From Macrostomum lignano (taxonomy: Eukaryota): 64,000 bases of DNA. Below are positions 1 through 62,359 of the stretch, piece after piece. The stretch lies in NCBI GenBank assembly GCA_002269645.1, contig NIVC01003003.1:1-64000 (forward strand). Reading direction: 5' to 3'. Position 1 is the first letter of the stretch, and each line of letters opens with the position of its first letter. Position numbers and translations under genes: made by a program. Below the pieces are notes generated by a model, which made no database searches, had not been told where the DNA came from, and was given only the letters and a program-made list of their open reading frames with translations.

Positions 1-3000
1 AGATCAAGCTCATGAGAAGAGTGAAATCAAGCTCATACAATTATGAGATCAAGCTCATGAGAGTGAAATCAAGCTCATAGCAATATGAGATCAAGCTCAT
101 GAAGAGTGAAATCAAGCTCATAGCAATCATGAGATCAAGCTCATAGCAATCATGAGATCAAGCTCATAGCAATCATGAGATCAAGCTATAGCAATCATGA
201 GATCAAGCTCATAGCAATCATGAGATCAAGCTCATACAATCATGAGATCAAGCTCATAGCAATCATGAGATCAAGCTCATAACAATCATGAGATCAAGCT
301 CATAGCAATCATGAGATCAAGCTCATAACAATCACGAGATCAAGCTCATAGCAATCATGAGATCAAGCTCATAGCAATCATGAGATCAAGTTCATAACAG
401 TCACGAGATCAAGCTCATAACAATCATGAGATCAAGCTCATAACAGTCATGAGATCAAGCTCATAACAGTCACGAGATCAAGCATAACAATCATGAGATC
501 AAGCTCATAACAATCATGAGATCAAGCTCATAACAATCATGAGATCAAGCTCATAACAATCATGAGATCAAGCTCATAACAATCATGAGATCAAGCTCAT
601 AACAATCATGAGATCAAGCTCATAACAATCATGAGATCAAGCTCATAACAATCATGAGATCAAGCTCATATGAATCATGAGATCAAGCTCATAACAGTCA
701 CGAGATCAAGCTCATAACAATCATGAGATCAAGCTCATAACAGTCACGAGATCAAGCTCATAACAATCATGAGATCAAGCTCATGAGAAGAGTGAAATCA
801 AGCTCATAACAATTATGAGATCAAGCTCATGAGAAGAGTGAAATCAAGCTCATAGCAATATGAGATCAAGCTCATGTGAAGAGTGAAATCAAGCTCATAG
901 CAATCATGAGATCAAGCTCATAACAATCATGAGATCAAGCTCATAACAATCATGAGATCAAGCTCATAGCAATCATGAGATCAAGCTCATAACAATCACG
1001 AGATCAAGCTCATAACAATCATGAGATCAAGCTCATAACAATCATGAGATCAAGCTCATAACAGTCATGAGATCAAGCTCATAGCAATCATGAGATCAAG
1101 CTCATAGCAATCACGAGATCAAGCTCATAACAATCACGAGATCAAGCTCATAACAATCATGAGATCAAGTTCATAACAGTCATGAGATCAAGCTCATAAC
1201 AATCATGAGATCAAGCTCATAACAATCATGAGATCAAGCTCATAACAATCATGAGATCAAGCTCATAACAATCACGAGATCAAGCTCATAACAATCATGA
1301 GATCAAGCTCATAACAATCATGAGATCAAGCTCATAACAATCATGAGATCAAGCTCATAACAGTCACGAGATCAAGCTCATAGCAATCATGAGATCAAGC
1401 TCATAACAATCACGAGATCAAGCTCATAGCAATCATGAGATCAAGCTCATAACAGTCACGAGATCAAGCTCATAACAGTCATGAGATCAAGCTCATAGCA
1501 ATCATGAGATCAAGCTCATAGCAATCACGAGATCAAGCTCATAACAATCACGAGATCAAGCTCATAGCAATCATGAGATCAAGTTCATAACAGTCACGAG
1601 ATCAAGCTCATAACAGTCACGAGATCAAGCTCATAACAATCATGAGATCAAGCTCATAACAATCATGAGATCAAGCTCATAGCAATCATGAGATCAAGCT
1701 CATAACAGTCATGAGATCAAGCTCATAACAGTCACGAGATCAAGCTCATAACAGTCATGAGATCAAGCTCATAACAGTCACGAGATCAAGCTCATAACAA
1801 TCATGAGATCAAGCTCATAACAGTCATGAGATCAAGCTCATAACAGTCACGAGATCAAGCTCATAACAATCATGAGATCAAGCTCATAACAATCATGAGA
1901 TCAAGCTCATAACAATCATGAGATCAAGCTCATAACAATCATGAGATCAAGCTCATAAAATCATGAGATCAAGCTCATAAGAATCATGAGATCAAGCTCA
2001 TAACAATCATGAGATCAAGCTCATAACAATCATGAGATCAAGCTCATAACAATCATGAGATCAAGCTCATAACAGTCATGAGATCAAGCTCATAACAGTC
2101 ACGAGATCAAGCTCATAACAATCATGAGATCAAGCTCATAAAAATCATGAGATCAAGCTCATAAGAATCATGAGATCAAGCTCATAAAAATCATGAGATC
2201 AATCTCATAAGAATAATGAGATCAAGCTCATAAAAATCATGAGATCAATCTCATAAGTATTATGAGATCAAGCTCATAACAGTCATGAGATCAAGCTCAT
2301 AACAATCATGAGATCAAGCTCATAACAATCATGAGATCAAGCTCATAACAATCATGAGATCAAGCTCATAACAATCATGAGATCAAGCTCATGAGAAGAG
2401 TGAAATCAAGCTCATAACAATTATGAGATCAAGCTCATGAGAAGAGTGAAATCAAGCTCATAGCAATTATGAGATCAAGCTCATGTGAAGAGTGAAATCA
2501 AGCTCATAGCAATCATGAGATCAAGCTCATAGCAATCATGAGATCAAGCTCATAGCAATCATGAGATCAAGCTTATAGCAATCATGAGATCAAGCTCATA
2601 GCAATCATGAGATCAAGCTCATAACAATCATGAGATCAAGCTCATAGCAATCATGAGATCAAGCTCATAGCAATCATGAGATCAAGCTCATAACAATCAT
2701 GAGATCAAGCTCATAGCAATCATGAGATCAAGCTCATAACAGTCATGAGATCAAGCTCATAGCAATCATGAGATCAAGCTCATAGCAATCACGAGATCAA
2801 GCTCATAACAATCACGAGATCAAGCTCATAGCAATCATGAGATCAAGCTCATAACAATCACGAGATCAAGCTCATAACAATCATGAGATCAAGCTCATAA
2901 CAATCATGAGATCAAGCTCATAACAGTCATGAGATCAAGCTCATAGCAATCATGAGATCAAGCTCATAGCAATCACGAGATCAAGCTCATAACAATCACG

Positions 3001-3531
3001 AGATCAAGCTCATAGCAATCATGAGATCAAGTTCATAACAGTCACGAGATCAAGCTCATAACAATCATGAGATCAAGCTCATAACAGTCACGAGATCAAG
3101 CTCATAACAGTCATGAGATCAAGCTCATAGCAATCATGAGATCAAGCTCATAGCAATCACGAGATCAAGCTCATAACAATCACGAGATCAAGCTCATAGC
3201 AATCATGAGATCAAGTTCATAACAGTCACGAGATCAAGCTCATAACAATCATGAGATCAAGCTCATAACAGTCATGAGATCAAGCTCATAACAGTCACGA
3301 GATCAAGCTCATAACAATCATGAGATCAAGCTCATAACAATCATGAGATCAAGCTCATAACAATCATGAGATCAAGCTCATAACAGTCATGAGATCAAGC
3401 TCATAACAGTCACGAGATCAAGCTCATAACAATCATGAGATCAAGCTCATATGAATCATGAGATCAAGCTCATAACAGTCACGAGATCAAGCTCATAACA
3501 ATCATGAGATCAAGCTCATATGAATCATGAG
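1..3531. repeat. 23-bp tandem satellite (GAGATCAAGCTCATAACAATCAT) with higher-order blocks; runs off the left edge
   Basis: Unit read directly; a variant block containing GAAGAGTGAAATC recurs at ~13, ~783 and ~2391. Confidence 0.97.
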
Positions 3532-4692: not shown

Positions 4693-5445
4693 CAACTTCA
4701 TTGATATTATCAGCTATCGTATATTTGATTGATAGTCGATTTCAGTAAAGTACCGGGCCAATTGGAAATAGTCTCCCGTTTATTTATGTCTATGGCCAAA
4801 ACAAAACAAATTTGCCATAGACAAATTCAGTCGAGAAAAATCCGATTAAACGTTCCTAATCAGCCTCTAGCTCATTTCTAAGAAAATCAAGTGTACCACC
4901 CTGCTACTGCAGTTGTCCGTGCGCCATGTACATGTACACCTACAGTAGTTCTCTGCGTGCTTTTTCTACCCTCTAAAAATCAAATTAATTTTTTGTTGTT
5001 TTATCAGAAACTAAGATAAACTAATCTGGCTGACTGTTAATCTAGTACTAGTGCACCGATATTTGAAATTAGCAATATGTACGATTGTATATGTACTTTG
5101 CACGTTTACCAGCGGCTTATCGGTTATTATGTACTTTAATCTCTGCTTGTACTTTAATATATAAAATAATTACAAAGCAAATTTTACCGTTCGATAGATT
5201 TGAACAATACAGCATTAATTACTAAGCATTCCTGAACAGAGAAAATAGAGCAAAATGTTTTTTTGCATTATATTTTATTATATTCAGATAATGCTTATAG
5301 CAAGCAAATAGTTAAACACACAAAGACCGCACAGGCTGCATAACTGACATTAAGAGAACAGAACAAGCTTATATACAAATAGACGGCGCATTACGGCAAA
5401 GGAGCACTGTTTGGGTGTCCAAACTATAGGGTTAATATTTATAAT

Positions 5446-6236
5446 TTATTTGAACTTGGCCAACTCTAGTAGCGATGCCCGCTGCGCATCCACCTGCAGT
5501 CCCTGTTCCGCTGTGCGCACCCGCTTCAACTGCGGCTCGGCCCGTAGCGCTGCCGATGCTTCAGCCGCCTGCTGCTCCTGTTCCTCCTCGCCGACAGAGC
5601 CGGGTCGCCGTCGCCGGCGCGGCTGCTCGTCAGCCGGCGCTAGCAGGTGTCGGTCCTCGCTGTAAGCCGGCAGTCGTCGATCGTCGGCCGGCTTAGCGGC
5701 GGAGCTGAGGAAACGCGACAGTACAAAACCGCGGCCGGAGCTGGCCGGCAGCGGCAGCTGGCCGCAAACTGTCGGATCCGAACGAACCGAGGCTGCACCG
5801 ACAGACGCCGACGCTGACGAAACGGCCGAATCGGCGCGACGTTTTGCCATCACGGAACGAAGTCTTGATTGAAGGTTGGCGCTGGGGCTTACTGTGGACT
5901 GCGGCGGAGGCGTGCCGAACAATTCGTCTAGAAGGTCCAACTCGTCATTGTTGGCATCGGCGGTCGCAGCAACTGGCGGAGCGGTCACAGCAGCAGCAGC
6001 GGGTGGCTGTCGATAAACTGGAGGCAGAGCGGCCGAGCTCCGCCCAGACCCGTCGCAGGTTTTAGTAAAGCTACTAGACGGCTCTGTGCCGCCAGCGTCG
6101 CCAGCTGGACAGTCGCGTTCAAACAGTGCGGCGACTAATTCGCCAGACTGAAAGTTCGGCGCCGAGGCAATGTCATGGCAGGCCAGGGCCGGCAGAGCAG
6201 AGTCGCTATTTGGACCCAGGCGCATCCAGCGGGCAT
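5446..6236 (-). CDS. USPL1: USPL1-like gene, exon 4 (end of the peptidase C98-like fold plus low-complexity tail)
   Basis: CTGTAG acceptor, phase 1 (A+AT = Asn) matches the exon 3 donor; ARWMRLGP...FQSGELVAALFER resembles recalled USPL1 GSWLECDD...VPASEIHIVIWER; stop at 5446. Confidence 0.75.
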
Positions 6237-7134
6237 CTACAGATTAATATATAGTGACAGATATCGGTCTGGTAGGGTTAAAATGGCACAGTTTAAGAGA
6301 AGCAGCTTGGGCTAAAAAGGAGACTAAATTCTGTTACCTGTTTTTAATATGAGCTAATTGTTGACTGTACCAATTACGTATGCTTAACTTTATTGACAGG
6401 TCAGACCAGATATTACCATAGAATATCGAGCGTAAACATAGAATGCCAACCTGTGGTGCCAGTGTAGAAGTCATTCGTTTTGTCTATGGTCGATAGCCAG
6501 ACTTACCCGACTTATCAATCAATTTCACCTCTAGATTGGCATTTTTATATTGACGCTTGATATACTGTTTATTGCTTGGCACATTTTTTAGTCACGAGAT
6601 TATTAGAGTGAGTGTAAAGGAAACCCAGACGGCATCAAAGGGAGCAAAAATTACTTATAATCTACGGTTTATTAACGAAACTGGATGCTTGCAGATAAGT
6701 CGGGTCGGAACTTACTTGAATTTCAACTTTTCAATGAGTTTTGTTGCACGCGATTAATGGCTAACTTTTCAAGACCATTTGTTCAGTGGGAGCCTGACTT
6801 AATCAAACTATATGTAGAGCAAGTAAGCAACTCATCAGGAAGGAGCATTTTACCTTAGTCGAACCTTCTTGAAGTTGATTCGCGAGCCGCCACCAAGCCG
6901 CACTGGCTCCTTCCTTTGTGCTTAATAATTATCATTCGCAACTATATAGCCGTAAAGTCAGTCTCTCACTGGGAAGACTCTTGATTTATAATGATTTTAG
7001 GCACCGCGTGGTTTTTAATTAGATCTTTTATACTTTATACAAGAATCGTTTTTTTAGTTTTAAAGGCAATAAAATTTTCTAATCCAAAATTATTTCTGTA
7101 GGCTGTAAAGTTCTCTTACAAAAAATGCTGGTAA

Positions 7135-9210
7135 GGCGTAAAGTCGGTTTCTGACTGGATTTTTTGGTATTATTAGCAAACCATAAAGTCGGTTTCTAAC
7201 TGGATATTTAGATAATGTTGGTAAGCCGCAAAGTCGGTTTCTGACTGGATATTTAGATAATGTTGGTAAGCCGTAAAGTCGGTTTCTGACTGGATATTTA
7301 GAAAATGTTGGTAAGCCGTAAAGTCGGTTTCTGACTGGATTTTTAGATAATGTTGGTAAGCCGTAAAGTCGGTTTCTGACTGGATTTTTAGATAATGTTG
7401 GTAAGCCGTAAAGTCGGTTTCTGACTGGATTTTTAGATAATGTTGGTAAGCCGTAAAGTCGGTTTCTGACTGGATTTTTAGATAATGTTGGTAAGCCGTA
7501 AAGTCGGTTTCTGACTGGATATTTAGATAATGTTGGTAAGCCGTAAAGTCGGTTTCTGACTGGATTTTTAGGTAATGTTGGTAAGCCGTAAAGTCGGTTT
7601 CTGACTGGATATTTAGATAATGTTGGTAAGCCGTAAAGTCGGTTTCTGACTGGATTTAGGTAATGTTGGTAAGCCGTAAAGTCGGTTTCTGACTGGATAT
7701 TTAGATAATGTTGGTAAGCCGTAAAGTCGGTTTCTGACTGGATATTTAGATAATGTTGGTAAGCCGTAAAGTCGGTTGCTGACTGGATATTTAGATAATG
7801 TTGGTAAGCCGTAAAGTCGGTTTCTGACTGGATATTTAGATAATGTTGGTAAGCCGTAAAGTCGGTTTCTGACTGGATTTTAGATAATGTTGGTAAGCCG
7901 TAAAGTCGGTTTCTGACTGGATATTTAGATAATGTTGGTAAGCCGTAAAGTCGGTTTCTGACTGGATTTTTAGGTAATGTTGGTAAGCCGTAAAGTCGGT
8001 TTCTGACTGGATATTTAGGACTAGGTAATGCTGGTAAGCCGTAAAGTCGATTTCTGACTGGATATTTAGGACTAGGTAATGCTGGTAAGCCGTAAAGTCG
8101 GTTTCTGACTGGATATTTAGATAATGTTGGTAAGCCGTAAAGTCGGTTTCTGACTGGATATTTAGATAATGTTGGTAAGCCGTAAAGTCGGTTTCTGACT
8201 GGATATTTAGATAATGTTGGTAAGCCGTAAAGTCGGTTTCTGACTGGATATTTAGATAATGTTGGTAAGCCGTAAAGTCGGTTTCTGACTGGATATTTAG
8301 ATAATGTTGGTAAGCCGTAAAGTCGGTTGCTGACTGGATATTTAGATAATGTTGGTAAGCCGTAAAGTCGGTTTCTGACTGGATATTTAGATAATGTTGG
8401 TAAGCTGTAAAGTCGGTTTCTGACTGGATTTTTAGGTAATGTTGGTAAGCCGTAAAGTCGGTTTCTGACTGGATATTTAGGACTAGGTAATGCTGGTAAG
8501 CCGTAAAGTCGATTTCTGACTGGATATTTAGGACTAGGTAATGCTGGTAAGCCGTAAAGTCAGTTTCTGACTGGATATTTAGGACTAGGTAATGCTGGTA
8601 AGCCGTAAAGTCGGTTTCTGACTGGATTTTTAGGTAATGTTGGAAAGCCGTAAAGTCGGTTTCTGACTGGATTTTTAGGTAATGCTGGTAAGCTGTAAAG
8701 TCGGTTTCTGACTGGATATTTAGGACTAGGTAATGCTGGTGAGCCGTAAAGTCGGTTTCTGACTGGATATTTAGGACTAGGTAATGCTGGTAAGCCGCAA
8801 AGTCGGTTTCTGACTGGATTTTTAGGACTAGGTAATGCTGGTAAGCCGTAAAGTCGGTTTCTGACTGGATTTTTAGGTAATGTTGGAAAGCCTCAAAGTC
8901 GGTTTCTGACTGGATTTTTAGGACTAGGTAATGCTGGTAAGCCGTAAAGTCGGTTTCTGACTGGATATTTAGGACTAGGTAATGCTGGTGAGCCGTAAAG
9001 TCGGTTTCTGACTGGATATTTAGGACTAGGTAATGCTGGTAAGCCGCAAAGTCGGTTTCTGACTGGATTTTTAGGACTAGGTAATGCTGGTAAGCCGTAA
9101 AGTCGGTTTCTGACTGGATTTTTAGGTAATGTTGGAAAGCCGCAAAGTCGGTTTCTGACTGGATTTTTAGGACTAGGTAATGCTGGTAAGCCGTAAAGTC
9201 GGTTTCTAGC
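7135..9210. repeat. 45/51-bp tandem satellite in USPL1-like intron 3
   Basis: Unit GTAAGCCGTAAAGTCGGTTTCTGACTGGATATTTAGATAATGTTG; the 51-bp form has a 6-bp insert (...TTAGGACTAGGTAATG...). Confidence 0.96.
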
Positions 9211-9898
9211 TGTGAACTTCGGTTCTTTTTGCATAACTGATTTTCAATTCAGATTTATAGTTTATATGTAATTCTCAATAGATTAAACAATTTTTTTTGT
9301 TTTAGCAAGCCGTAAAGATTTCGTTTTCTTTTCTGCAAAGTCCACACCTGACTATAAGTATATCGCAATCTCGCATCAGCACAATAAGTGCTATTTTCGA
9401 CAAGAATCGAATTAATAACACTTCGATCACCGATGCGGGCTTGCCCTAAAGTGGTAAGACACAAAGAATGTCTACAAATATACATACAATAGCATTTATA
9501 TAGTCAATACTTGTACTTAAAACACTATGATAGAAAACAGGCACAAGTATAATATTCATTCACACAGACTAGACACTGAAAAAGTTTAAAATAAAATTTT
9601 AAAAACACCCTAATAAAAGACAGAAATGCAACTTTTAGTATAATGGATTCTAGAACGTGCTACACACAGTTACAGTAGAAAGTATTTAGCTTAGAAAACA
9701 GTTTGACCCGTTTTATTATTTTTAACCAGTTAACCCACTAGTTTTGTTCTTGCTCTAACAACTTTTACGATTGCGTCCTCTCCAAATTTTGAAATGGCCA
9801 ATTTGGCCAAGTGGCAGGTCTAGTATAGTATCTGCGAGTCCAGTCAGACCACACACGCAAGCACACTAGAGTCGGCTAGTTATTAAAGCAAAACTTAC

Positions 9899-10101
9899 TG
9901 TCCCGACTGTATAGCCAAATAAAGTAATAAAATTGATTGTTAGATTGGCTGCTACGAGTCAATCGTTGCACAGCTGCCGTAGGTATCAGGGCCAGGCCAT
10001 CGTGCGTGCGCAGGCTCTTATTCAGCTGGATTGGGCCGGGCAAGCCGTCGCGGGCCTCTAGGAAAACTGCGTCCGAGATTGGCTGGCGGCCGTCTGAGGA
10101 T
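9899..10101 (-). CDS. USPL1: USPL1-like gene, exon 3
   Basis: TTTTTCTCCAG acceptor (phase 2) and A|GTAAGT donor (phase 1); VFLEARDGLP and NNQFYYFIWL resemble USPL1 FMLHFVEGLP and NNHFITW. Confidence 0.78.
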
Positions 10102-10191
10102 CTGGAGAAAAATAACAAGACTTGACAATTAAAATCCCATTGTCTCAAACAAATACATTAAATTATTATTCAACATAAGTTCAACGCGTAC

Positions 10192-10325
10192 TTTTCCCAG
10201 CGCAACAAAACGCGCTGCTGCGGCGCCCTGCAGTGTTGGCAAGGCCGCAAGAAGACTCGCTTGTTGGGATCAAATAGATCGAAATCTGTAGCCGGATCGC
10301 TCAATCGTAGTACGGTGGCTTTTTG
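10192..10325 (-). CDS. USPL1: USPL1-like gene, exon 2 (not in the ORF track)
   Basis: TTGTTAG acceptor, AA|GTACGC donor (phase 2, fits exon 3); QKATVLRLSDPATDFDLFDPNKRVFLRPCQHCRAPQQRVLLRWEK resembles USPL1 KSLVTF...FGPCNNCNSKSQIRKMVLEK. Confidence 0.75.
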
Positions 10326-10979
10326 CTAACAAATGAGAGTAATTGTGCATTTGTTTATTATTGGAATACGAAACGGTAACAAATTAATGAAGTACTGCTC
10401 TGTCTTACACTGGCTTTTTGTCATAGCGTGCGTTAAATTAATTTCGTTATCCTAAATTTCAACCTGGGTGACACATTGGCACCCTGTTTTTTTCTAAGCT
10501 GGATATCATTTGGTTTAAATATATATTTTTTGTATTTTAACCTCTGTTTTAGGCATTAATAACTCTATAATTATATGGATTTTAGGATTTTCAAGACTTC
10601 TATCAATTGTCAAATGGTTGGGTAATCTGTAAACATGGAGTTTGCAGATTTCTGCAACTTCTATGTCAGAGACTTAGCAGTGTAAAGGGTAGAGGTAGAG
10701 GGTGTTGATATTTTTTTATTTTGAATTCTGAAACTTGTTTAAAGATCTGAACTTGGACCCAGGATGCCAAATGGCACTGCAACTCTGACGCTTAACAAAC
10801 CCAATACGAGCGTTAATAACGCCGTGTACTCAGAAACACAAAAATGGCCATTAAGTTATTGTTAAGCACTGTCTAAGAATCTTACTAGACTAAAACCTTG
10901 ATCTGGACCAATATCACAATTGCTGTAATTGTTCACACGAAAACGAACACCCAGCGCCGAGGCAATTTATTCATCTTAC

Positions 10980-11767
10980 CGGCTAACGTGCTGCTTAAAG
11001 CACACAGTGCAGACCTGGCGCAGGGTGTGAACAGACTGGAATTGTTTAGCCAATCGCTTGTCGGATTTCAATAGCCGATGCGCGGTCTCATAAAAATCGT
11101 CGCGAACATCGCTGACGCTTAGGGAGAGTGGCTTAGCCACTAATCTATCTAGCGAGTCCAGCTCGCGCAGCACCGACCGTTCAATATCGGCCAGGCCGAC
11201 AAGTTCCAAATTGCGAAACTGACGCCTCGTTGAAACTCGTCCAGAGGAGACCTGCGCCGGGTGCAACGACGCTCTGGTTAGTCGCAGCGCTTTAGCGTAG
11301 GCGCGGCTGCACGCGGCCAGGGTGCCGGATGAAGTTGAAGCTGCCGCACTGGCTCGCCGCTGGACAGGACCGCAGAGAACAGTAGTTAGCGCGGCGGCAG
11401 TAAACGGACCAGACCGATCAGGCTCGGTCATTGTGTGAACAAACACTTCATCTGGTTCCACTGGCAGATGGCTAACTGATTCAATAGATGCAGCCTGGCT
11501 GTCAGCATCGGAATGATCCAATTTAGCTGTCGGAGAAGATGAACTAGCAGCTGGCGGACTAGCTGGCATGTCTGTGTAGGGCCTGGCTAGGTTTGGCGCA
11601 GGCAGCTCGGACACCATAGGGTACAGACACTGGGCATTGTCGCACACTGGCATTGCTCGCATCCAGCCGCACTGAGCTATGCGAACTGCGCTGCCGCACA
11701 GAGGACAAACAGACGGACAGGAAAGCTGCGGCCGACTAGGACTGACATCCTCGGCGCTGGTGCCCAT
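10980..11767 (-). CDS. USPL1: USPL1-like gene, exon 1 (N-terminal Cys4 motif plus first half of the C98-like fold)
   Basis: CPLCG...VCDNAQCLYP resembles the USPL1 N-terminal CPAC...LCEDLQCIYP; LLKSDKRLAKQF...CTVC resembles LLKLETHIEKLF...CSQC; donor CG|GTAAGA. Confidence 0.75.
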
Positions 11768-17877: not shown

Positions 17878-18620
17878 CCGATCACTAATCTGCCTCATCT
17901 CATCTCACTAATCCTATCAGTTTTATCACACTAATCCGCCTCAGTCCCTCATCACTAATCCGCCTCAGTCCCCTATCACTAATCTGCCTCAGTCCCCTAT
18001 CACTAATCTGCCTCAGTCCCCTATCACTAATCCGCCTCAGTCCCCTATCACTAATCCGCCTCAGGCCCGTATCACTAATCTGCCTCAGTCCCCTATCACT
18101 AATCTGCCTCAGTCCCCTATCACTAATCCGCCTCAGGCCCGTATCACTAATCCGCCTCAGGCCCGTATCACTAATCCGCATCAGTCCCCTATCACCAATC
18201 CATTTCAGGCTTCTAGCTATTGCACTAATCCGTTTCAGGCTCCTATCACTAATCCGCCTCAGTCCCCTATCACTAATCCGCCTCAGGCCCCTATCACTAA
18301 TCCGCCTCAGGCCCCTATCACTAATCCGCCTCAGTCCCCTATCACTAATCCGCCTCAGGCCCCTATCACTAATCCGCCTCAGTCCCATATCACTAATCCG
18401 CCTCAGTCTCATATAACTAATCCGCCTCAGGCCCCTATCACTAATCCGCCTCAGTCCCCTATCACTAATCCGCCTCAGGCCCCTATCACTAATCCGCCCC
18501 AGGCCCCTATCACTAATCCGCCTCAGGCCCCTATCACTAATCCGCCTCAGGTCCCTATCACTAATCCGCCTCAGGCCCCTATCACTTATCCGCCTCAGGC
18601 CCCTATCACTAATCCACCTC
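17878..18620. repeat. 24-bp minisatellite filling the last RBCK1 intron
   Basis: Unit CACTAATCCGCCTCAGKCCCCTAT. Confidence 0.95.
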
Positions 18621-18651
18621 AGGCCCCTGTCCCAGCCGCAGCAGCGCTCAC

Positions 18652-19197
18652 CTCCAGGTGCGTCAGATTGAGCTGGGCCTCCTTATTATTCTTAGCGTCA
18701 ATCCTCAGCTGGTTCTGGTATCGCCGACAGCTGACGCCCGGATGCGAGGCCCGACACGTGACGCAGTTGTGCAGGCCGCACAGCATGCACTCGAAGCTGT
18801 TAACATCTTCGGCCAGCTCAACGAAGGCGTCGCAGTTAGGCGCCACGCAGTGGAACGTGTTGGGTATGACAGCTTCGGCTTGTCGAAGGCCCAACCGTTG
18901 CAACCGGTCGAATTCTTGACTGGTTAGCAACTGGTTGGCCTCCGAATCGGTCACCGTCTGCTGGCACTGATCGTGCGGACAGCGGACTGGCATGGAGTCG
19001 GCGTGGAGCAGGTGCTGGCGCAGGCACTCTCGGCACACCTCGTGGCCGCAGTCGCGCAATTGAATGCCGTCCGCATCGCACTCTGCCGATACGTCCGTGA
19101 TGCAGATCGGGCATTCGAAATCTTGCTTGGCCGGAATTAATGAACAGTTTGCCAAGGCCAGGTGCGCACTGAGATTGCGACTGCGCTGGCGCTCTTG
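18652..19197 (-). CDS. RBCK1: RBCK1 homolog, RING1-IBR exon
   Basis: CACAG|CAA acceptor and GAG|GTGAGC donor, both phase 0; FECPIC...LRDCGHEVCRECL...CPHDQC and FHCVAPNC...CMLCGLHNCVTCRASH motifs. Confidence 0.93.
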
Positions 19198-19371
19198 CTG
19201 TGTTTGGTAATGCATGATGAGTGTTGGCATTGTTGTTGGCATTTGCTGTTTGACAGAGTGCAACGGTAATATAAATCTTTATTACATGGCATTGTGTGAT
19301 ATAGCAAAGCCACATTGCTGGCTTTGAGTCAAGCGTGTTGAATTTGCCTAATTTTTTGCCTAATTTGCCAC

Positions 19372-39499: not shown

Positions 39500-40705
39500 A
39501 CATTTCACAAACTGGAGTCCTGGACACTTCACAAACAGGAAAATTCACAAACTGGACACTTCACAAACTAGACACTTCACAAACTGGACACTTCACAAAC
39601 AGGAAAATTCACAAACTGGACACTTCACAAACTAGACACTTCACAAACTGGACACTTCACAAACAGGAAAATTCTCAAACTGGACACTTCACAAACTGGA
39701 CACTTCACAAACTAGACACTTCACAAACTGGACACTTCACAAACTGGACACTTCACAAACTAGACACTTCACAAACTGGACACTTCACAAACTGGACACT
39801 TCACAAACTGGACACTTCACAAACTAGACACTTCACAAACTGGACACTTCACAAACTGGACACTTCACAAACAGGAAAATTCACAAACTGGACTCTTCAC
39901 AAACTGGACACTTCACAAACTGGACACTTCACAAACTGGACACTTCACAAACTGGACACTTCACAAACTGGACACTTTACAAACTGGACACTTCACAAAC
40001 TGGACACTTCACAAACAGGAAAATTCTCAAACTGGACACTTCACAAACTGGACACTTCACAAACAGGAAAATTCTCAAACTGGACACTTCACAAACTGGA
40101 CACTTCACAAACAGGAAAATTCTCAAACTGGACACTTCACAAACTGGACACTTCACAAACAGGAAAATTCTCAAACTGGACACTTCACAAACTGGACACT
40201 TCACAAACTGGACTCTTCACAAACTGGACACTTCACAAACTGGACACTTCACAAACTGGACTCTTCACAAACTGGACACTTCACAAACTGGACTCTTCAC
40301 AAACTGGACACTTCACAAACTGGACACTTCACAAACTGGACTTCACAAACTGGACACTTCACAAACTGGTCACTTCTTCAAACTGGACACTTCACAAACT
40401 GGACACTTCACAAACTGGACTTTCACAAACTGGACACTTCACAAACTGGACACTTCACAAACTGGACACTTCACAAACTGGAAAATTCACAAACTGGACT
40501 CTTCACAAACTGGACACTTCACAAACTGGACACTTCACAAACTGGACACTTCACAAACTGGACACTTCACAAACTGGACACTTCACAAACTGGACACTTT
40601 ACAAACTGGACACTTCACAAACTGGACACTTCACAAACTGGACACTTTACAAACTGGACACTTCACAAACTGGACACTTCACAAACTGGACACTTCACAA
40701 ACTAC
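39500..40705. repeat. 16-bp minisatellite
   Basis: Unit CACTTCACAAACTGGA. Confidence 0.96.
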
Positions 40706-41464: not shown

Positions 41465-42430
41465 TTTTGTGAAGTTTGGAGATTGTGAAGTTTAGGGATT
41501 GCGAAGCTTGGGGATTGTGGATCTTGGGGATTGTGAAGATTGGAGATTGTGAAGCTAATGGATTGTGAAGCTAATGGATTGTGAAGCTAATGGATTGTGA
41601 AGCTAATGGATTGTGAAGCTAATGGATTGTGAAGCTAATGGATTGTGAAGCTTGGAGATTGTGAAGATTGGAGATTGTGAAGCTTGGGGATTGTGAAGCT
41701 TTGGGATTGTGAAGCTTGGGGATTGTGAAGCTTGGGGATTGTGAAGCTTGGGGATTGTGAAGCTTGGGGATTGTGAAGCTTGGGGATTGTGAAGCTTGGG
41801 GATTGTGAAGCTTGGGGATTGTGAAGCTTGGGGATTGTGAAGCTTGGGGATTGTGAAGCTTGGGGATTGTGAAGCTTGGGGATTGTGAAGCTTGGGGATT
41901 GTGAAGCTTGGGGATTGTGAAGCTTGGGGATTGTGAAGCTTGGGGATTGTGAAGCTTGGGGATTGTGAAGCTTGGGGATTGTGAAGCTTGGGGATTGTGA
42001 AGCTTGGGGATTGTGAAGCTTGGGGATTGTGAAGCTTGGGGATTGTGAAGCTTGGGGATTGTGAAGATTGGAGATTATGAAGCTTGGGGATTGTGAAGAT
42101 TGGGGATTGGGAGGCTTGGAGATTGTGAAGCTTGGGGATTGTGAAGCTTGGGGATTGTGAAGCTTGGGGATTGTGAAGCTTGGGGATTGTGAAGCTTGGG
42201 GATTGTGAAGCTTGGGGATTGTGAAGCTTGGGGATTGTGAAGCTTGGGGATTGTGAAGCTTGGGGATTGTGAAGCTTGGGGATTGTGAAGATTGGGGATT
42301 GGGAGGCTTGGAGATTCTGGAGATTGGTGATTGGGAGGCTTTGGGATTGTGAAGATTGGGGATTGTGAAGCATGGATTGGGAAGTTTGGGCATTGGTGAA
42401 GTTGGATGTCAATGGGGATTGTGAAATCTG
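41465..42430. repeat. 16-bp minisatellite
   Basis: Unit GAAGCTTGGGGATTGT. Confidence 0.96.
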
Positions 42431-43035
42431 GAGAGTTTGAGCCAGTTTCACAGCTGGTGACAGTCAGCTTTGCATTTCGATCTTGTAAACAATAATAATA
42501 AGCAGAAGCTTTTTCTGTCAGTGCTTACTTCTAAAAGTCAAAGCAGCAATCAGCAATTTTGTCCGTCAGGCCTCAGCCAGAATTCCAACTACAAAGGCCA
42601 ATAATTACCGGTCCCAGGTACTCGTAAAAGGGGAGTTTATCAAACGTGTTTAAGTCAGACAATTTCAAGATCTGTGAAGAAATATTCTGGAAAAAGAAGG
42701 TCGACAATGCTCATAATTGCAACATAATCGCACAGTTTATTGCACCAATTATAGTCCGTAAATTTTGGTTCAGCCGGCTATAGCAAAATCTGCGACAATT
42801 ATCGCCTAATCTGCAACAAAGGCACTGACGCATCCAATGCCAAATTTTCTGGCCTTGGACAATTTTCGCAAAATTACAGTAAATTACATAATGCTCCAAT
42901 TATTTTGTTTGCGGCAATCAGCATCTTCTGCGGGGGATAAATTGCTTCTATTTTGCAATTGTTCCAATCATTCTTTTCCTTAGGGGTGACGTCTAAAAGC
43001 AAGGAAAGTTGCCTTTTCAATATTGGTCAATGTCC

Positions 43036-53784: not shown

Positions 53785-54450
53785 GTGCAGTTTAGGGATG
53801 CTGCAGCTGGATGCTGCAGTTTAGGGATGCTGCAGTTTAGGGATGCTGCAGTTTAGGGATGCTGCAGTTTAGGGATGCTGCAGTTTAGGGATGCTGCAGT
53901 TTAGGGATGCTGCAGTTTAGGGATGCTGCAGTTTAGGGATGCTGCAGTTTAGGGATGCTGCAGTTTAGGGATGCTGCAGTTTAGGGATGCTGCAGTTTAG
54001 GGATGCTGCAGTTTAGGGATGCTGCAGTTTAGGGATGCTGCAGTTTAGGGATGCTGCAGTTTAGGGATGCTGCAGTTTAGGGATGCTGCAGTTTAGGGAT
54101 GCTGCAGTTTAGGGATGCTGCAGTTTAGGGATGCTGCAGTTTAGGGATGCTGCAGTTTAGGGATGCTGCAGTTTAGGGATGCTGCAGTTTAGGGATGGTG
54201 CAGTTTAGGGATGCTGAAGTTTAGGGATGCTGCAGTTTAGGGATGCTGCAGTTTAGGGATGCTGCAGTTTAGGGATGCTGCAGTTTAGGGATGCTGCAGT
54301 TTAGGGATGCTGCAGTTTAGGGATGCTGCAGTTTAGGGATGGTGCAGTTTAGGGATGCTGCAGTTTAGGGATGCTGCAGTTTAGGGATGCTGCAGTTTAG
54401 GGATGCTGCAGTTTAGGGATGCTGCAGTTTAGGGATGCTGCAGTTTAGAG
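53785..54450 (+). repeat. 16-bp TTAGGG-containing satellite, left arm of an inverted pair
   Basis: Unit TTTAGGGATGCTGCAG. Confidence 0.97.
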
Positions 54451-55344
54451 ATGGACAGTTCAACGATCGTTATAGCTGGGCTTGTAAAATTCCAAGATTG
54501 TGATTGTTAATCTTGTTGAGTTGAGCCTCAAACAGATGAAGAAAACAAAGATGCAGCGGCCAGCATCCACAGGCACGTGAAATGAACCACGTCCGATGCC
54601 CTGACGGTGTTGAATACTGTTGACAGCAGCTTGCGTGCATTCAGGCATATTTCGAAACGGCTCAACCAGAGATCAATTGAGCTGCCAAATCAAAAGACAA
54701 ACATCATCTTTCAAACGGATTATGACTGCCGACCATCTGTCGCAAAATACGTTTGCGGTTTGCTACAAATTTCGTGGGAAATTGGCGGAAATGCGATCGG
54801 GAAAACAGGATTTAGTAAGATTTTAAACTGAATTCTGTACTCGCCCGTATTCGGCTTGAAATGTAATACACGAAACCGACCCGAAAGCTGCAAGACAGAG
54901 AGAGAGCTAGAAAAGAAATCCACCGAAAAAAAACATTTTTGTTCTCTATTATATAGTCTTCTCCATTTCCAGTGGCTGGCTTGCATCAAGGCCTGCTGCT
55001 GCTGCTGGTGGTAGCGAAGAAAAATATGGCCTTCTGACTGGCGGTTGCTTGACTTCTTGCTTTTGCACAGGCGTGGCTGGGGCTTTTGCAATCGCGGATT
55101 GAAACGGGCGAAGAGCCGCCTCGTGACTGACAAGCTGAATATTTGCTAGAATATTGCGCTACACAAAATCCAGCTCGTAGGTATCAGAAACGCGTGGGGG
55201 AGACACGACCTACATGGTGGATGCTTAGATATTGTATTTCCTAGATTCTGTGTTGCAGTTCTTGCAAGAGCGAAACGTTTCTGTCACCCTGGCGGCAGTA
55301 TTTTAATGCTATTATATTTTACTTTCGATTGGCACCATTCAAAT

Positions 55345-59899: not shown

Positions 59900-61608
59900 A
59901 AACAGCATCATCACTACCCGTGTCCTTATCCAGCATCATCCCCACCCGTGTCCTTATCCAGCATCATCACCACCCGTGTCCTTATCCAGCATCATCACCA
60001 CCCGTGTCCTTATCCAGCATCATCCCCACCCGTGTCCTTATCCAGCATCATCACCACCCGTGTCCTTATCCAGCATCATCCCACCCGTGTCCTTATCCAG
60101 CATCATCCCCACCCGTTTCCTTATCCAGCATCATCACTACCCGTGTCCTTATCCAGCATCATCACTACCCGTGTCCTTATCCAGCATCATCACCACCCGT
60201 GTCCTTATCCAGCATCATCCCCACCCGTTTCCTTATCCAGCATCATCCCCACCCGTGTCCTTATCCAGCATCATCCCACCCGTGTCCTTATCCAGCATCA
60301 TCCCCACCCGTGTCCTTATCCAGCATCATCCCACCCGTGTCCTTATCCAGCATCATCCCCACCCGTTTCCTTATCCAGCATCATCCCCACCCGTGTCCTT
60401 ATCCAGCATCATCACCACCCGTGTCCTTATCCAGCATCATCCCCACCCGTGTCCTTATCCAGCATCATCCCACCCGTGTCCTTATCCAGCATCATCCCCA
60501 CCCGTTTCCTTATCCAGCATCATCCCCACCCGTGTCCTTATCCAGCATCATCCCCACCCGTGTCCTTATCCAGCATCATCCCCACCCGTGTCCTTATCCA
60601 GCATCATCACCACCCGTGTCCTTATCCAGCATCATCACTACCCGTGTCCTTATCCAGCATCATCCCCACCCGTTTCCTTATCCAGCATCATCACTACCCG
60701 TGTCCTTATCCAGCATCATCACCACCCGTGTCCTTATCCAGCATCATCCCACCCGTTTCCTTATCCAGCATCATCCCCACCCGTGTCCTTATCCAGCATC
60801 ATCACCACCCGTGTCCTTATCCAGCATCATCACCACCCGTGTCCTTATCCAGCATCATCCCCACCCGTGTCCTTATCCAGCATCATCCCACCCGTGTCCT
60901 TATCCAGCATCATCCCACCCGTGTCCTTATCCAGCATCATCCCCACCACCCGTGTCCTTATCCAGCATCATCCCCACCCGTTTCCTTATCCAGCATCATC
61001 CCCACCCGTGTCCTTATCCAGCATCATCACCACCCGTGTCCTTATCCAGCATCATCCCCACCACCCGTGTCCTTATCCAGCATCATCCCCACCCGTTTCC
61101 TTATCCAGCATCATCCCCACCCGTGTCCTTATCCAGCATCATCCCCACCCGTGTCCTTATCCAGCATCATCACCACCCGTGTCCTTATCCAGCATCATCC
61201 CCACCCGTGTCCTTATCCAGCGTCATCCCCACCCGTGTCCTTATCCAGCATCATCCCACCCGTTTCCTTATCCAGCATCATCCCCACCCGTGTCCTTATC
61301 CAGCATCATCACCACCCGTGTCCTTATCCAGCATCATCCCCACCCGTGTCCTTATCCAGCATCATCACCACCCGTGTCCTTATCCAGCATCATCCCACCC
61401 GTTTCCTTATCCAGCATCATCCCCACCCGTGTCCTTATCCAGCATCATCACCACCCGTGTCCTTATCCAGCATCATCCCACCCGTGTCCTTATCCAGCAT
61501 CATCCCCACCCGTGTCCTTATCCAGCATCATCACCACCCGTGTCCTTATCCAGCATCATCCCCACCCGTTTCCTTATCCAGCATCATCCCCACCCGTGTC
61601 CTTATCCA
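59900..61608. repeat. 27/28-bp minisatellite (source of three ~600-aa spurious ORFs)
   Basis: Unit CCAGCATCATCCCCACCCGTGTCCTTAT. Confidence 0.97.
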
Positions 61609-62359
61609 TTTGCACGGAAGAAACTCCATCAAGACGAAAACTGTGAACCATTTCTCCAACAAAAAATGTCAGACACAAATTCCAATTTCATTTTCTATTG
61701 TTGGCTTATGCATAAAAAAGAGTTAATTGACGGCAGGGTCAATGCCTCAACTTGACATCCGGTACCCAGATGGTCAGCGGGTCGCTATGCCGCTATTAGG
61801 CGGAACCGAATCTTATTAGATGAGGCTGTTAGCTGGGTGGCCGAGGCAATATTTTTCTCTAAATTTTCCTGGGGATCGATTTCCATTTCTTCTTCCCATT
61901 TTCACCTAACCCTCCCGACCAGGAACCCATCCAGTTTTTCATTTATCGAAGCCATCCATTCAAGATATCAGCGGCAGTTTTGGGGGCAGTTCGAATTCCC
62001 TATGGGAGGCTGGGCGCGAAAATAAACAAGTGCCAATTTGGATTTCTTTCGTCATCGAGCGCGCGCGGCGGCGGGGGCAGCGGCGGTGCGGGGTGTCAAG
62101 TGGCGATGCCAGATGTCGCGCTTCAATGTCAGTCACTCCCGCTGGGCGTCACGGGCGGCGGCAGCGGGGGGGGGGCAATGGGGCCGACTGGTTTCGAATA
62201 AGATTTTTTTCCTAATTGGCCGCCTTTTCCGCATCAGCTTGCGTGGCGCGAATGTTCAGGCTCTTCAGAAATCATCAGGGAGGAAGACGGTTGCGCTTTG
62301 TGATCCCGACTTAGTTGCTAAGGCTAGGGCTTTTCTCGGCTTGTCTGTCCTGCTGTCTT

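What the first reader, a model, noticed from the sequence alone, without database searches (positions are those of the whole stretch)
5446..11767. USPL1 homolog that appears to be a pseudo-isopeptidase with the whole catalytic triad lost
Seen: four exons give a USPL1 N-terminal Cys4 motif followed by colinear C98-fold landmarks (CTVC, PCQHC, DGLP, ELVAALFER). At the recalled catalytic positions, W-x-N...LCWLD reads MTEPDRSGPFTAA (no Cys), NNHF reads NNQF, and WLECDD reads WMRLGP. Established: USPL1 is a Cajal-body SUMO isopeptidase linked to snRNA transcription and reported to have essential non-catalytic functions. Inference: this lineage keeps the fold as a SUMO-binding or scaffolding module without activity. 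The alignment is from memory.
Basis: partly seen in the sequence, partly recalled or inferred. Interest (0 to 1): 0.74.

Follow-up and report, generated by a model that had tools for sequence, protein, structure and literature searches.

The report
Catalytically dead USPL1 homolog, flatworm
This is the Macrostomum lignano (flatworm) version of USPL1, a SUMO-removing protease. It keeps the protease fold and zinc sites and is under purifying selection, but it has lost the catalytic histidine and apparently the cysteine, so it probably works as a non-enzymatic scaffold.

Summary
The four-exon gene is real. It lies on the minus strand, from the ATG at 11767 to the stop at 5446, and every quoted peptide string is present. 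The window is Macrostomum lignano.

The protein is a very divergent USPL1 (Peptidase_C98) homolog. The evidence:
- A related species' ortholog passes Pfam's C98 threshold.
- hhalign against vertebrate USPL1 gives E about 1e-5.
- The four finger zinc cysteines and the USPL1-specific Phe after the catalytic His are kept.
- All three introns sit at vertebrate USPL1 exon ends.
- The top Foldseek hits of an AF2 model are USPL1 structures.

Catalytic residues:
- His456 is Gln in M. lignano. It is still His in another Macrostomum species and Cys in a second M. lignano paralog.
- Cys236 has no supported Cys counterpart.
- Asp472 aligns with Gly or His.

Most SUMO-tail contact residues are also replaced, so a SUMO-binding role is not supported. 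dN/dS is about 0.12, which argues for a retained non-catalytic function.

This window's copy lacks one base at the start of exon 2. That is most likely an assembly error. I found no spliced transcript joining exons 3 and 4.

Verdict: a new variant of a known kind, of moderate interest.

The parts
10980..11767 (-). Exon 1. It runs from the ATG at 11765-11767 to the strong donor CCG|GTAAGA. It encodes aa 1-262 plus two bases of Arg263, covering the N-terminal Cys4 motif, the helical 'thumb' region and the first zinc-finger pair CTVC.
   Evidence: ORF and translation. Ungapped and 99.5% identical to paralogous locus L002. Intron-free junction KQHVSR|QKA seen in a transcript of a related species.
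11615..11719 (-). N-terminal Cys4 motif CPSVCPLCGS...VCDNAQCLYPM (aa 17-51). It resembles the vertebrate USPL1 N-terminal CPAC...LCE(N/D)xQCIYPLG motif.
   Evidence: Pairwise BLASTP to alligator USPL1 gives E = 8e-5. Co-aligned by MAFFT. An HMM of 10 vertebrate motifs gives only E = 0.07 over the six-frame window. This is the most constrained segment, with dN/dS 0.07.
11186..11221 (-). QFRNLELVG191LAD. This is the best-supported counterpart of the human Cys box QWKNAYALC236WLD. Asn (oxyanion position) and Asp are kept, and the nucleophile is Gly.
   Evidence: MAFFT. hhalign local best hit, E = 0.23 on its own. Ungapped profile scan z = 3.7, rank 2 of 421.
11372..11374 (-). Cys132 (VLCGP). It is the only Cys between the N-terminal motif and the zinc finger that is conserved in all three family members, and it is the alternative candidate for the nucleophile position.
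   Evidence: Cys inventory and placement score z = 1.3, rank 34 of 421. Spacing to CTVC is 121 aa, against 125 aa in human. No Asn five residues upstream.
11000..11011 (-). CTVC, the first pair of finger-subdomain zinc ligands (equivalent to human C361/C364).
   Evidence: hhalign confidence 9. Local HMM alignment.
10326..10979 (-). Intron 1 (GT...AG). Its position matches the vertebrate exon end ...QYQNR|.
10192..10325 (-). Exon 2 (134 nt here, 135 nt in all other copies). It encodes QKATVLRLSDPATDFDLFDPNKRVFLRPCQHCRAPQQRVLLRWEK. One base is missing at its first position, right after the acceptor TTAG.
   Evidence: L002 and L004 read TTAG|ACAAAAAG. L003, the same locus in GCA_002269645.1, reads TTAG|GCAAAAAG. 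The window reads TTAG|CAAAAAG.
10230..10241 (-). CQHC, the second pair of zinc ligands (equivalent to human C397/C400). Human N398 is Gln here.
   Evidence: confidence 9.
10102..10191 (-). Intron 2 (GT...AG). Its position matches the vertebrate exon end ...VLEK|.
9899..10101 (-). Exon 3. It encodes the palm strands, including the His box.
9930..9941 (-). NNQF, equivalent to human NNH456F457. The catalytic His is replaced by Gln (codon CAA, against CAC in the related species). The USPL1-specific Phe is kept.
6237..9898 (-). Intron 3 (GTAAGT...AG, phase 1). Its position matches the vertebrate exon end ...DADG|. It contains a 45-bp satellite, and an AATAAA at 9712-9717 lies downstream of the read-through stop at 9876.
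   Evidence: Both transcript-derived sequences (P0001, P0002) read through this donor.
7124..9207 (.). 45-bp tandem repeat, 44.6 copies, inside intron 3.
5446..6236 (-). Exon 4. It encodes the last palm strands (ARWMRLGP, LACHDI, GELVAALFERD) and a 220-aa low-complexity tail with conserved motifs (LQSRLRSVMAKRR, GFVLSRFL). The stop is at 5446-5448 and an AATAAA at 5445-5450.
   Evidence: UniRef model A0A1I8HDA4 has the same junction. Paralog P0006 is colinear across it. The 3 differences to L002 are all synonymous, with 0 gaps. The last strand places with z = 4.5. AF2 strands 281-284, 298-300 and 309-318.

Best explanation
The locus is the Macrostomum lignano ortholog of USPL1, the USP-like, Peptidase_C98 SUMO isopeptidase.

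After restoring the single base missing at the start of exon 2, the protein is 638 aa and has these parts:
- an N-terminal Cys4 motif;
- a helical thumb;
- a four-cysteine zinc finger;
- the His-box strand and the final USP strand;
- a long disordered tail.

Catalytic residues:
- The general base His456 is Gln. This is shown.
- The nucleophile Cys236 is most likely Gly191. This is the best of several placements, and none of the supported ones gives Cys.
- Asp472 is Gly or His. Its placement is ambiguous.

Residues that hold the SUMO C-terminal tail in human USPL1 are mostly replaced as well.

The coding sequence is nevertheless under strong purifying selection. I therefore infer that it is a pseudo-protease kept for a non-catalytic, protein-binding or scaffolding role. 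The role is most plausibly the catalysis-independent nuclear function described for human USPL1 (Cajal-body integrity, and snRNA transcription with the little elongation complex), rather than SUMO cleavage or canonical SUMO-tail binding.

The frameshift in this window's copy is most likely an assembly indel.
For: Organism and copies:
- The closest proteins are M. lignano BOX15_Mlig016927g2 and UniRef A0A1I8HDA4.
- The window is the same locus as NIVC01000169.1. There are 0 mismatches and only indels.

Homology to USPL1:
- Pfam PF15499 gives 29.4 bits for ortholog P0002, above the gathering score of 27. The M. lignano protein gives 19-20 bits. There is no UCH hit.
- hhalign against vertebrate USPL1 gives E = 6e-6 to 2e-5 over 128-132 columns.
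- The four zinc cysteines are aligned with confidence 9, and F457 is kept in all three family members.
- All three introns coincide with the recurrent ends of truncated vertebrate USPL1 products: QNR|, LEK| and DADG|.
- An AF2 model (pLDDT 66, core 72-92) has USPL1 structures 7p99, 7zju and 7zjv as its top four Foldseek hits, with E about 1e-12.

Catalytic residues.

Selection:
- dN/dS is 0.12 against the related-species transcript.
- There are 7 synonymous and 3 non-synonymous differences to the paralogous locus.

Human USPL1 triad and SUMO contacts: PMC8983731. The human sequence was verified against 7p99_A. Non-catalytic functions of human USPL1: PMC3937775 and PMC4281951.
Against: - The thumb alignment is unresolved: hhalign confidence there is 0, and the Pfam hit starts only at profile position 69. 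An invariant Cys132, whose spacing to the zinc finger is human-like, could therefore sit at the nucleophile position.
- The usable AF2 model was built from an MSA that contained vertebrate USPL1, aligned by MAFFT. Its USPL1-like fold and helix start at Gly191 are therefore not independent evidence. Its TM-score is only 0.41-0.53.
- The family-only AF2 model was unusable (pLDDT 35.7).
- The window protein alone is below Pfam's threshold.
- An exhaustive profile search found no canonical USPL1.
- I saw no transcript joining exons 3 and 4. Both transcript-derived sequences run into intron 3.
- The scaffold and Cajal-body role is pure inference from the human protein.
- I could not search the M. 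lignano genome for a canonical, active USPL1.
Confidence: 0.68

Rival explanations
1. The protein is still an active cysteine protease with a shifted active site. Cys132 (VLCGP) would be the nucleophile, and another residue would serve as the base, at least in species that keep NNHF.
For: - Cys132 is invariant in all three family members. Its distance to the zinc finger (121 aa) matches the human C236-C361 distance of 125 aa.
- The related species keeps His456.
- The thumb alignment is not resolved.
Against: - In M. lignano the His is Gln, and in paralog P0006 it is Cys.
- The C132 placement scores z = 1.3, against 3.7 for Gly191.
- There is no Asn five residues upstream, and the Cys is followed by Gly-Pro rather than by an aromatic residue and a helix.
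- The tail-binding residues H421 and Y451 are replaced in all members, and N398 differs in every member (Q, H, G).
Confidence: 0.07
2. The copy in this window is a real pseudogene. The 1-nt deletion at the first base of exon 2 shifts the frame (...KQHVSRKKPPYYD*), and this is tolerated because M. lignano carries several redundant copies.
For: - The missing base is seen. The only in-frame alternative is a weak donor, CAC|GTTAGC.
- Other annotated copies also show frameshifts: P0048 in exon 2 and P0004 in exon 1.
- At least four loci exist.
Against: - The same locus in GCA_002269645.1 (L003) has the base: TTAGGCAAAAAG against TTAGCAAAAAG, a GG-to-G contraction.
- L003 differs from the window only by indels, with zero mismatches. 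Each assembly has private indels in otherwise identical sequence, which is typical of long-read assembly errors.
- The rest of the ORF is intact, and the differences to L002 are mostly synonymous.
Confidence: 0.15
3. The gene product ends in intron 3 (a 383-aa isoform ending SRDSKFCFNN*), and the exon-4 ORF is a separate transcription unit. The protein would then lack the last palm strands altogether.
For: - Both transcript-derived sequences read through the exon-3 donor (P0001 and P0002).
- An AATAAA lies at 9712-9717.
- The NCBI annotation calls the exon-4 ORF as its own gene (P0003).
Against: - Beyond GTAAGTTT the two species' read-through sequences are unrelated, so they are intronic.
- Vertebrate USPL1 has an exon end at the same place.
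- Exon 4 begins with exactly the missing USP strands: RW..., and the last strand places with z = 4.5.
- Paralog P0006 and UniRef A0A1I8HDA4 are colinear across the junction.
- The differences in exon 4 are all synonymous.
Confidence: 0.12
4. The similarity to USPL1 is convergent or reflects a generic USP fold. The protein would descend from another USP, for example an inactive one such as USP39/Sad1, rather than from USPL1.
For: - The window protein is below Pfam's C98 cut-off.
- The exhaustive profile search reached no canonical USPL1.
- The N-terminal motif HMM is not significant.
- UniProt names it only 'USP domain-containing protein'.
Against: - C98 is the only protease family hit, and P0002 passes its threshold. 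No UCH hit was found at E up to 1 for P0002, P0005 and P0006, or up to 10 for the window protein.
- Phe rather than Tyr follows the catalytic His position, which is a USPL1 signature (PMC8983731).
- Three of three intron positions are shared.
- USPL1 structures outrank all other USPs in Foldseek.
- The N-terminal CPxC...C(D/E)NxQC(I/L)YP motif is in the same position.
Confidence: 0.05

Closest known systems
Human USPL1 (SUMO-specific isopeptidase, MEROPS C98; PDB 7P99, 7ZJU, 7ZJV)
   Same: - USP right-hand fold with a four-cysteine zinc finger in the fingers subdomain.
- Phe after the catalytic-His position.
- An N-terminal CPxC...C(D/E)NxQC(I/L)YP motif upstream of the domain.
- Three shared intron positions.
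- The final strand ends in (W/F)ER.
- The human protein already has essential functions that do not need catalysis.
   Different: - About 20% identity over the core.
- His456 to Gln, Cys236 to Gly (best placement), Asp472 to Gly or His.
- SUMO-tail contacts H421, Y451, N398 and H493 are replaced.
- The thumb is either rearranged or about 60 aa shorter, and the loop carrying R324/M330/S332/F335 does not align.
- No DUF4650 match in the C-terminal tail.
- 638 aa, compared with roughly 1,090 aa for the human protein (a figure from my own knowledge, not checked here).
Catalytically inactive USP-fold proteins such as USP39/Sad1 and PAN2/USP52 (from general knowledge, not tested here)
   Same: The USP fold is kept while catalytic residues are lost, and the protein is used as a structural or recruiting subunit of RNA-processing machinery. 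USP39/Sad1 acts in the snRNP pathway, the same cellular area as human USPL1.
   Different: No sequence relationship beyond the shared fold. Those proteins belong to family C19, and the present protein matches C98 only.
UniRef A0A1I8HDA4 and A0A1I8ITY3 (M. lignano 'USP domain-containing protein', automatic annotation)
   Same: A0A1I8HDA4 is the same gene family copy, with the same exon 3-4 junction. A0A1I8ITY3 is a 35%-identical paralog that also lacks the His (it has Cys there).
   Different: These database entries carry no statement about USPL1 orthology or about loss of the active site. The A0A1I8HDA4 model has a wrong N-terminus that misses the first CPLC pair.

Membership tests
USPL1 / Peptidase_C98 (Pfam PF15499) | Match to the Pfam C98 profile at or above the gathering score (27 bits) | tested here: inconclusive
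   The window protein gives 19.3 bits (E = 9.5e-4) and P0005 gives 20 bits, both below the cut-off. The 70%-identical ortholog P0002 gives 29.4 bits (E = 8.2e-7), above it. Paralog P0006 gives 11.7 bits.
USPL1 / Peptidase_C98 | Profile-profile similarity to bona fide USPL1 catalytic domains | tested here: met
   hhalign probability 77-85%, E = 6e-6 to 2e-5, over 128-132 core columns from the first CxxC to the His box.
USPL1 / Peptidase_C98 | Catalytic triad Cys236-His456-Asp472 | tested here: not met
   His456 to Gln364 (confidence 7). Cys236 to Gly191 in the best placement, and no supported placement gives Cys. Asp472 to Gly383 or His396. The Cys and Asp placements are uncertain.
USPL1 / Peptidase_C98 | Four-cysteine zinc site in the fingers subdomain (C361, C364, C397, C400) | tested here: met
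   C253, C256, C292 and C295 align with confidence 9.
USPL1 / Peptidase_C98 | Phe (not Tyr) directly after the catalytic His, a signature of USPL1 orthologs (PMC8983731) | tested here: met
   F365 in the window, and Phe in P0002 and P0006.
USPL1 / Peptidase_C98 | SUMO2-contact residues R324, M330, S332, F335, N398, H421, Y451, H493 | tested here: not met
   N398 to Q, H421 to E, Y451 to R and H493 to V. The thumb residues are in a region with alignment confidence 0 (residues).
USPL1 / Peptidase_C98 | N-terminal CPxC...LC(D/E)xxQC(I/V)(Y/F)PLG motif upstream of the catalytic domain | tested here: inconclusive
   The pattern is present at aa 21-51. Pairwise BLASTP gives E = 8e-5. The motif HMM gives only E = 0.07, rank 2 of 1752 six-frame pieces.
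USPL1 / Peptidase_C98 | Gene structure shared with vertebrate USPL1 | tested here: met
   The flatworm introns after VSR, after WEK and within the codon after SRD coincide with the recurrent ends of truncated vertebrate products at QNR|, LEK| and DADG|. This is indirect, because vertebrate genomic DNA was not examined.
USPL1 / Peptidase_C98 | USP right-hand fold closest to solved USPL1 structures | tested here: inconclusive
   The top four Foldseek hits are 7p99, 7zju (two chains) and 7zjv, with E about 1e-12 and TM 0.41-0.53. However, the model's MSA contained vertebrate USPL1. The family-only model failed.
USPL1 / Peptidase_C98 | C-terminal DUF4650 region | tested here: not met
   No PF15509 hit at E up to 10.
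USPL1 / Peptidase_C98 | SUMO isopeptidase activity, Cajal-body localisation | not testable with these tools
   Needs biochemistry and cell biology.
Ubiquitin-specific USPs (C19, Pfam UCH PF00443) | Match to the UCH profile; Tyr after the catalytic His; blocking loops | tested here: not met
   No UCH hit at E up to 10 for the window protein, or up to 1 for P0002, P0005 and P0006. Phe is in place of Tyr.

The most novel reading that the evidence does not exclude
Macrostomum flatworms have kept USPL1 for a long time only as a non-catalytic module. Synonymous divergence between the species compared is dS about 1.6. The nucleophile was lost before the two species and the two paralogs split, the His was lost later in M. 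lignano, and the SUMO C-terminal-tail cleft was dismantled. If so, the conserved, selected function of USPL1 needs neither isopeptidase activity nor canonical SUMO-tail binding. It would instead reside in the N-terminal Cys4 motif and the zinc-finger/palm surface.
Probability: 0.3. Interest if true: 0.6.

Novelty: new variant of a known kind. Interest (0 to 1): 0.45.

Why it matters
Human USPL1 is unusual among SUMO proteases. Its knock-down phenotypes (Cajal-body loss, poor proliferation, reduced snRNA) were reported not to depend on its catalytic activity, and what the non-catalytic function is remains open.

A lineage that keeps the gene under purifying selection after losing the active-site His, and apparently the Cys and the SUMO-tail contacts, is a natural separation-of-function allele. 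The parts that stay conserved point to the surfaces that carry the non-catalytic function. They are the N-terminal Cys4 motif, the QFRN-to-CTVC segment, the zinc-finger strands and two C-terminal motifs. M. lignano is a laboratory model that has been used for gene-function studies, so this could be followed up experimentally.

The finding is limited to one genus, rests on very divergent alignments, and adds a variant to a known family rather than a new kind of system.

Tried and rejected
- PDB sequence searches with the spliced protein and with a two-sequence profile found no USPL1.
- The exhaustive representative search with the P0001 + P0002 profile found only Macrostomum proteins, so it gave no deeper family alignment and no link to canonical USPL1.
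- The word-indexed search with human USPL1 returned vertebrates only, so it says nothing about a canonical USPL1 in flatworms.
The model therefore had to start from a substring of P0005.
- AF2 on the family-only alignment was unusable (pLDDT 35.7).
- Pfam scans of isolated thumb and C-terminal fragments gave no C98 coordinates that could settle the Cys or Asp placement.
- The motif HMM for the N-terminal Cys4 region was not significant.
- I first modelled exon 1 as ending at a weak donor (CAC|GTTAGC, 10988) to keep the frame. I dropped this after the other copies showed that a base is missing at the exon-2 acceptor.
- I considered the read-through tail SKFCFNN as a conserved C-terminus and rejected it. 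Only the splice-donor consensus is shared between the species.
- Residue-level superposition on 7P99 was not possible, because neither model coordinates nor Foldseek alignments are returned.

Full report
**What is in the sequence.** Between 5446 and 11767 the minus strand carries a four-exon gene.
- Exon 1 is 11767-10980. It starts at the first ATG after an in-frame stop and ends at a strong donor, CCG|GTAAGA.
- Exon 2 is 10325-10192.
- Exon 3 is 10101-9899, with donor ACA|GTAAGT.
- Exon 4 is 6236-5446. Its stop is TAA at 5446-5448, and an AATAAA overlaps it.
- Intron 3 is 3.66 kb long and holds a 45-bp satellite of 44.6 copies at 7124-9207.

[quoted passage not shown] They are BOX15_Mlig016927g2 (98% identical) and UniRef A0A1I8HDA4, a 'USP domain-containing protein' of 632 aa.
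- The window is colinear with contig NIVC01000837.1 (L002) at 92-99% identity.
- It is the same locus as NIVC01000169.1 (L003). There are zero mismatches over about 5 kb, and the only differences are indels.
- At least four loci of this gene exist in that assembly.
- A second, 35%-identical paralog also exists: A0A1I8ITY3, here P0006.
- A 70%-identical ortholog (P0002) comes from a transcript contig in a public sequencing run, SRR28338165.
- An exhaustive profile search of 1.84 billion representative proteins found nothing outside these Macrostomum sequences.

**Gene model.** Three points need comment.

1. *A missing base at the start of exon 2.* In this window exon 2 starts TTAG|CAAAAAG. The two paralogous loci read TTAG|ACAAAAAG, and the same locus in the other assembly reads TTAG|GCAAAAAG.
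   - With the strong donor, the window as written therefore frameshifts to ...KQHVSRKKPPYYD*.
   - Only a weak upstream donor (CAC|GTTAGC) keeps the frame, at the cost of three residues.
   - The two assemblies of this locus differ only by private indels, and this one is a GG-to-G contraction. I therefore take it to be an assembly error, with probability about 0.75-0.8. The real protein would then read ...KQHVSRQKATV..., as in the related species' mRNA.
   - A real pseudogenised copy is the alternative.

2. *Exon 4 belongs to the gene.*
   - The UniRef model uses the same junction.
   - Paralog P0006 is colinear across it and shares later motifs: LRHRLESVMQSRR with LQSRLRSVMAKRR, and YVMSRFL with FVLSRFL.
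   - The first 45 residues of exon 4 supply exactly the USP strands that are otherwise missing. The last-strand placement scores z = 4.5, and AF2 predicts strands at model residues 281-284, 298-300 and 309-318.
   - The three differences to L002 in exon 4 are all synonymous, with no gaps.

3. *No spliced exon 3-4 transcript was seen.*
   - Both transcript-derived sequences run on into intron 3 (P0001 ends SKFCFNN*, P0002 ends SKFF*).
   - Beyond the donor consensus the two read-throughs are unrelated, so they are intronic.
   - An AATAAA lies at 9712-9717.
   - A truncated isoform therefore remains possible.

*Intron positions.* All three flatworm introns fall where truncated vertebrate USPL1 products recurrently end...QYQNR|...VLEK| and ...DADG|. 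This is indirect evidence for shared ancestral introns. It also supports intron 3 as a true intron.

**Homology to USPL1.**
- I verified the human catalytic-domain sequence against PDB 7p99_A (100% over 287 residues). I took the triad Cys236-His456-Asp472 and the SUMO contacts from PMC8983731.
- Pfam gives Peptidase_C98 as the only protease family. The window protein scores 19.3 bits, below the gathering score of 27, and P0002 scores 29.4 bits, above it. No UCH hit appears.
- hhalign of the flatworm family against vertebrate USPL1 gives 77-85% probability and E = 6e-6 to 2e-5. The alignment covers 128-132 core columns, from LLKSDKRLAKQF...CTVC to NNQF...W.
- The four zinc cysteines align with confidence 9. 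The Phe that follows the catalytic His in all USPL1 orthologs (Tyr in ubiquitin USPs) is kept in all three family members.
- The N-terminal motif CPLCGS...VCDNAQCLYPM resembles vertebrate CPACxxxG...LCE(N/D)xQCIYPLG. Pairwise BLASTP gives E = 8e-5, but a motif HMM gives only E = 0.07 against the six-frame window. It is therefore supporting evidence, not proof.
- An AF2 model built on an alignment that included vertebrate USPL1 reached pLDDT 66, with 72-92 in the fingers and palm. Its four best Foldseek hits in the PDB are the USPL1 structures (E about 1e-12, TM 0.41-0.53), ahead of all other USPs.
- That model is not independent of the alignment it was given, and the family-only model failed.
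- Taken together, I put the USPL1 orthology at about 0.9.

**Catalytic residues.**

*His456.*
- hhalign aligns NNQF directly with NNHF, giving Gln364 (confidence 7).
- The related species has NNHF (codon CAC, against CAA here), and paralog P0006 has ADCF.
- This loss is well supported, and within the orthologs it is specific to M. lignano.

*Cys236.*
- The thumb cannot be aligned with confidence. hhalign confidence there is 0, and the Pfam match begins only at profile position 69.
- The best colinear placement pairs QFRNLELVG191LADIERSVL with QWKNAYALC236WLDCILSAL. MAFFT finds it, as do local hhalign and the ungapped scan (z = 3.7). It keeps the Asn five residues upstream and Asp239 but puts Gly at the nucleophile. 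It also implies a thumb about 60 residues shorter than in human.
- Only two cysteines lie between the N-terminal motif and the zinc finger. Cys132 (VLCGP) is invariant and sits 121 residues before CTVC, against 125 in human, but its local match is poor (z = 1.3) and there is no upstream Asn. Cys153 is not conserved.
- So no supported alignment gives a Cys, but Cys132 cannot be excluded without a structure.

*Asp472.*
- Anchored on the conserved Trp (W+4), Asp472 falls on Gly383 of RWMRLGP.
- Anchored on local similarity (LACHDI against LECDDL, z = 3.7, confidence 3), it falls on His396, with Asp397 next to it.

**SUMO contacts.**
- Of the residues that bind SUMO2 in 7P99, those in confidently aligned regions are replaced. 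N398 is Q, H or G. H421 is E in all three members. Y451 is R, R or Q. H493 is V or L, at confidence 4.
- Only F457 is kept.
- The thumb loop with R324, M330, S332 and F335 either does not align or is deleted.
Binding of the SUMO body elsewhere is not excluded.

**Selection.**
- Over exons 1-3 against the related-species transcript, dN/dS is 0.12 (dS about 1.6, close to saturation). It is lowest in the N-terminal Cys4 motif (0.07) and in the QFRN-to-CTVC segment (0.05).
- Against the paralogous locus there are 7 synonymous and 3 non-synonymous differences.
- The family is therefore maintained by selection despite the loss of the active site.

**How it most likely works.**
- Shown: a USPL1-type USP fold with intact zinc sites, no catalytic His, and purifying selection.
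- Inferred: a pseudo-protease that acts by binding partners. It probably continues the catalysis-independent nuclear role described for human USPL1, namely Cajal-body integrity, association with the little elongation complex and snRNA transcription (PMC3937775 and PMC4281951).
- The most constrained segments are candidate interaction surfaces.
- It works like other inactive USP-fold proteins used as structural subunits, such as USP39/Sad1 and PAN2 (from general knowledge, not tested here). It is not a member of their family.

**Novelty and limits.**
- The proteins are already in UniProt under an automatic name.
- My text searches found no paper linking USPL1 with flatworms or describing an inactive USPL1 ortholog.
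- It is a new variant of a known kind.
- Main limits: the thumb alignment is unresolved, no independent confident structure is available, I saw no spliced exon 3-4 transcript, and I could not search the M. lignano genome for a canonical active USPL1.

Noticed in passing
window 10325/10326 (exon-2 acceptor), and generally window vs L003: The window and NIVC01000169.1 are the same locus. They have zero mismatches but many private 1-nt indels in each assembly, for example 2 in exon 1 of L003 and 11 in intron 1. Reading frames of other genes in this window may also be broken by assembly indels rather than by biology.
   Followed up: partly
window 7124-9207: A 45-bp satellite (44.6 copies, 92% matches) lies inside intron 3. 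The array is about 2.1 kb here and in L003, but only about 1.2 kb in the paralogous locus L002, so its copy number differs between paralogs.
   Followed up: partly
window 1-64000: The window is saturated with tandem arrays (40 TRF rows at score 300 or more). Examples are 23 bp x 154 at 1-3531, 28 bp x 61 at 59903-61608, and 16-bp arrays at 39520-40703, 41467-42405 and 53786-54453. Several long 'ORFs' are just translated repeats, for example 59920-61755, and 41603-42451 with a sub-threshold Cornifin hit.
   Followed up: partly
window 18619-19263 (-), with repeats at 17929-18628: The upstream neighbour on the same strand encodes RING plus IBR domains (IBR E = 1.4e-7), which suggests an RBR-type E3 ubiquitin ligase. 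The matching gene in L002 also carries RanBP-type zinc-ribbon hits. A 24-bp tandem array lies next to or within it.
   Followed up: partly
window 9712-9717 and 9876-9898 (-): Both available transcript-derived sequences (M. lignano P0001 and related-species P0002) read through the exon-3 donor into intron 3. An AATAAA lies about 160 nt beyond the read-through stop. This could mean intron retention or intronic polyadenylation, giving a 383-aa product without the last palm strands.
   Followed up: partly
P0006 (UniRef A0A1I8ITY3, M. lignano), not in the window: A second, 35%-identical paralog in the same species has Cys at the catalytic-His position (ADCF) and Ser/Ser or Glu/Asp at the Asp position. 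Its gene model seems to lack the first zinc-finger pair and part of the thumb.
   Followed up: partly
L004 (NIVC01003002.1) and L003 (NIVC01000169.1): Other annotated copies carry frameshifts: P0048 in exon 2 (KRVSCGLANT...) and P0004 in exon 1 (MPSVCTLWCPSCLPP...). Either long-read assembly errors are frequent in this gene, or redundant copies are decaying.
   Followed up: no
window 5446-6110 (-), C-terminal tail: The tail contains an acidic NNDELDLLDELFG motif and a basic RRRRR stretch. There is a sub-threshold Pfam hit to DUF6278 at aa 580-632 (E = 0.011). I did not pursue their meaning.
   Followed up: no
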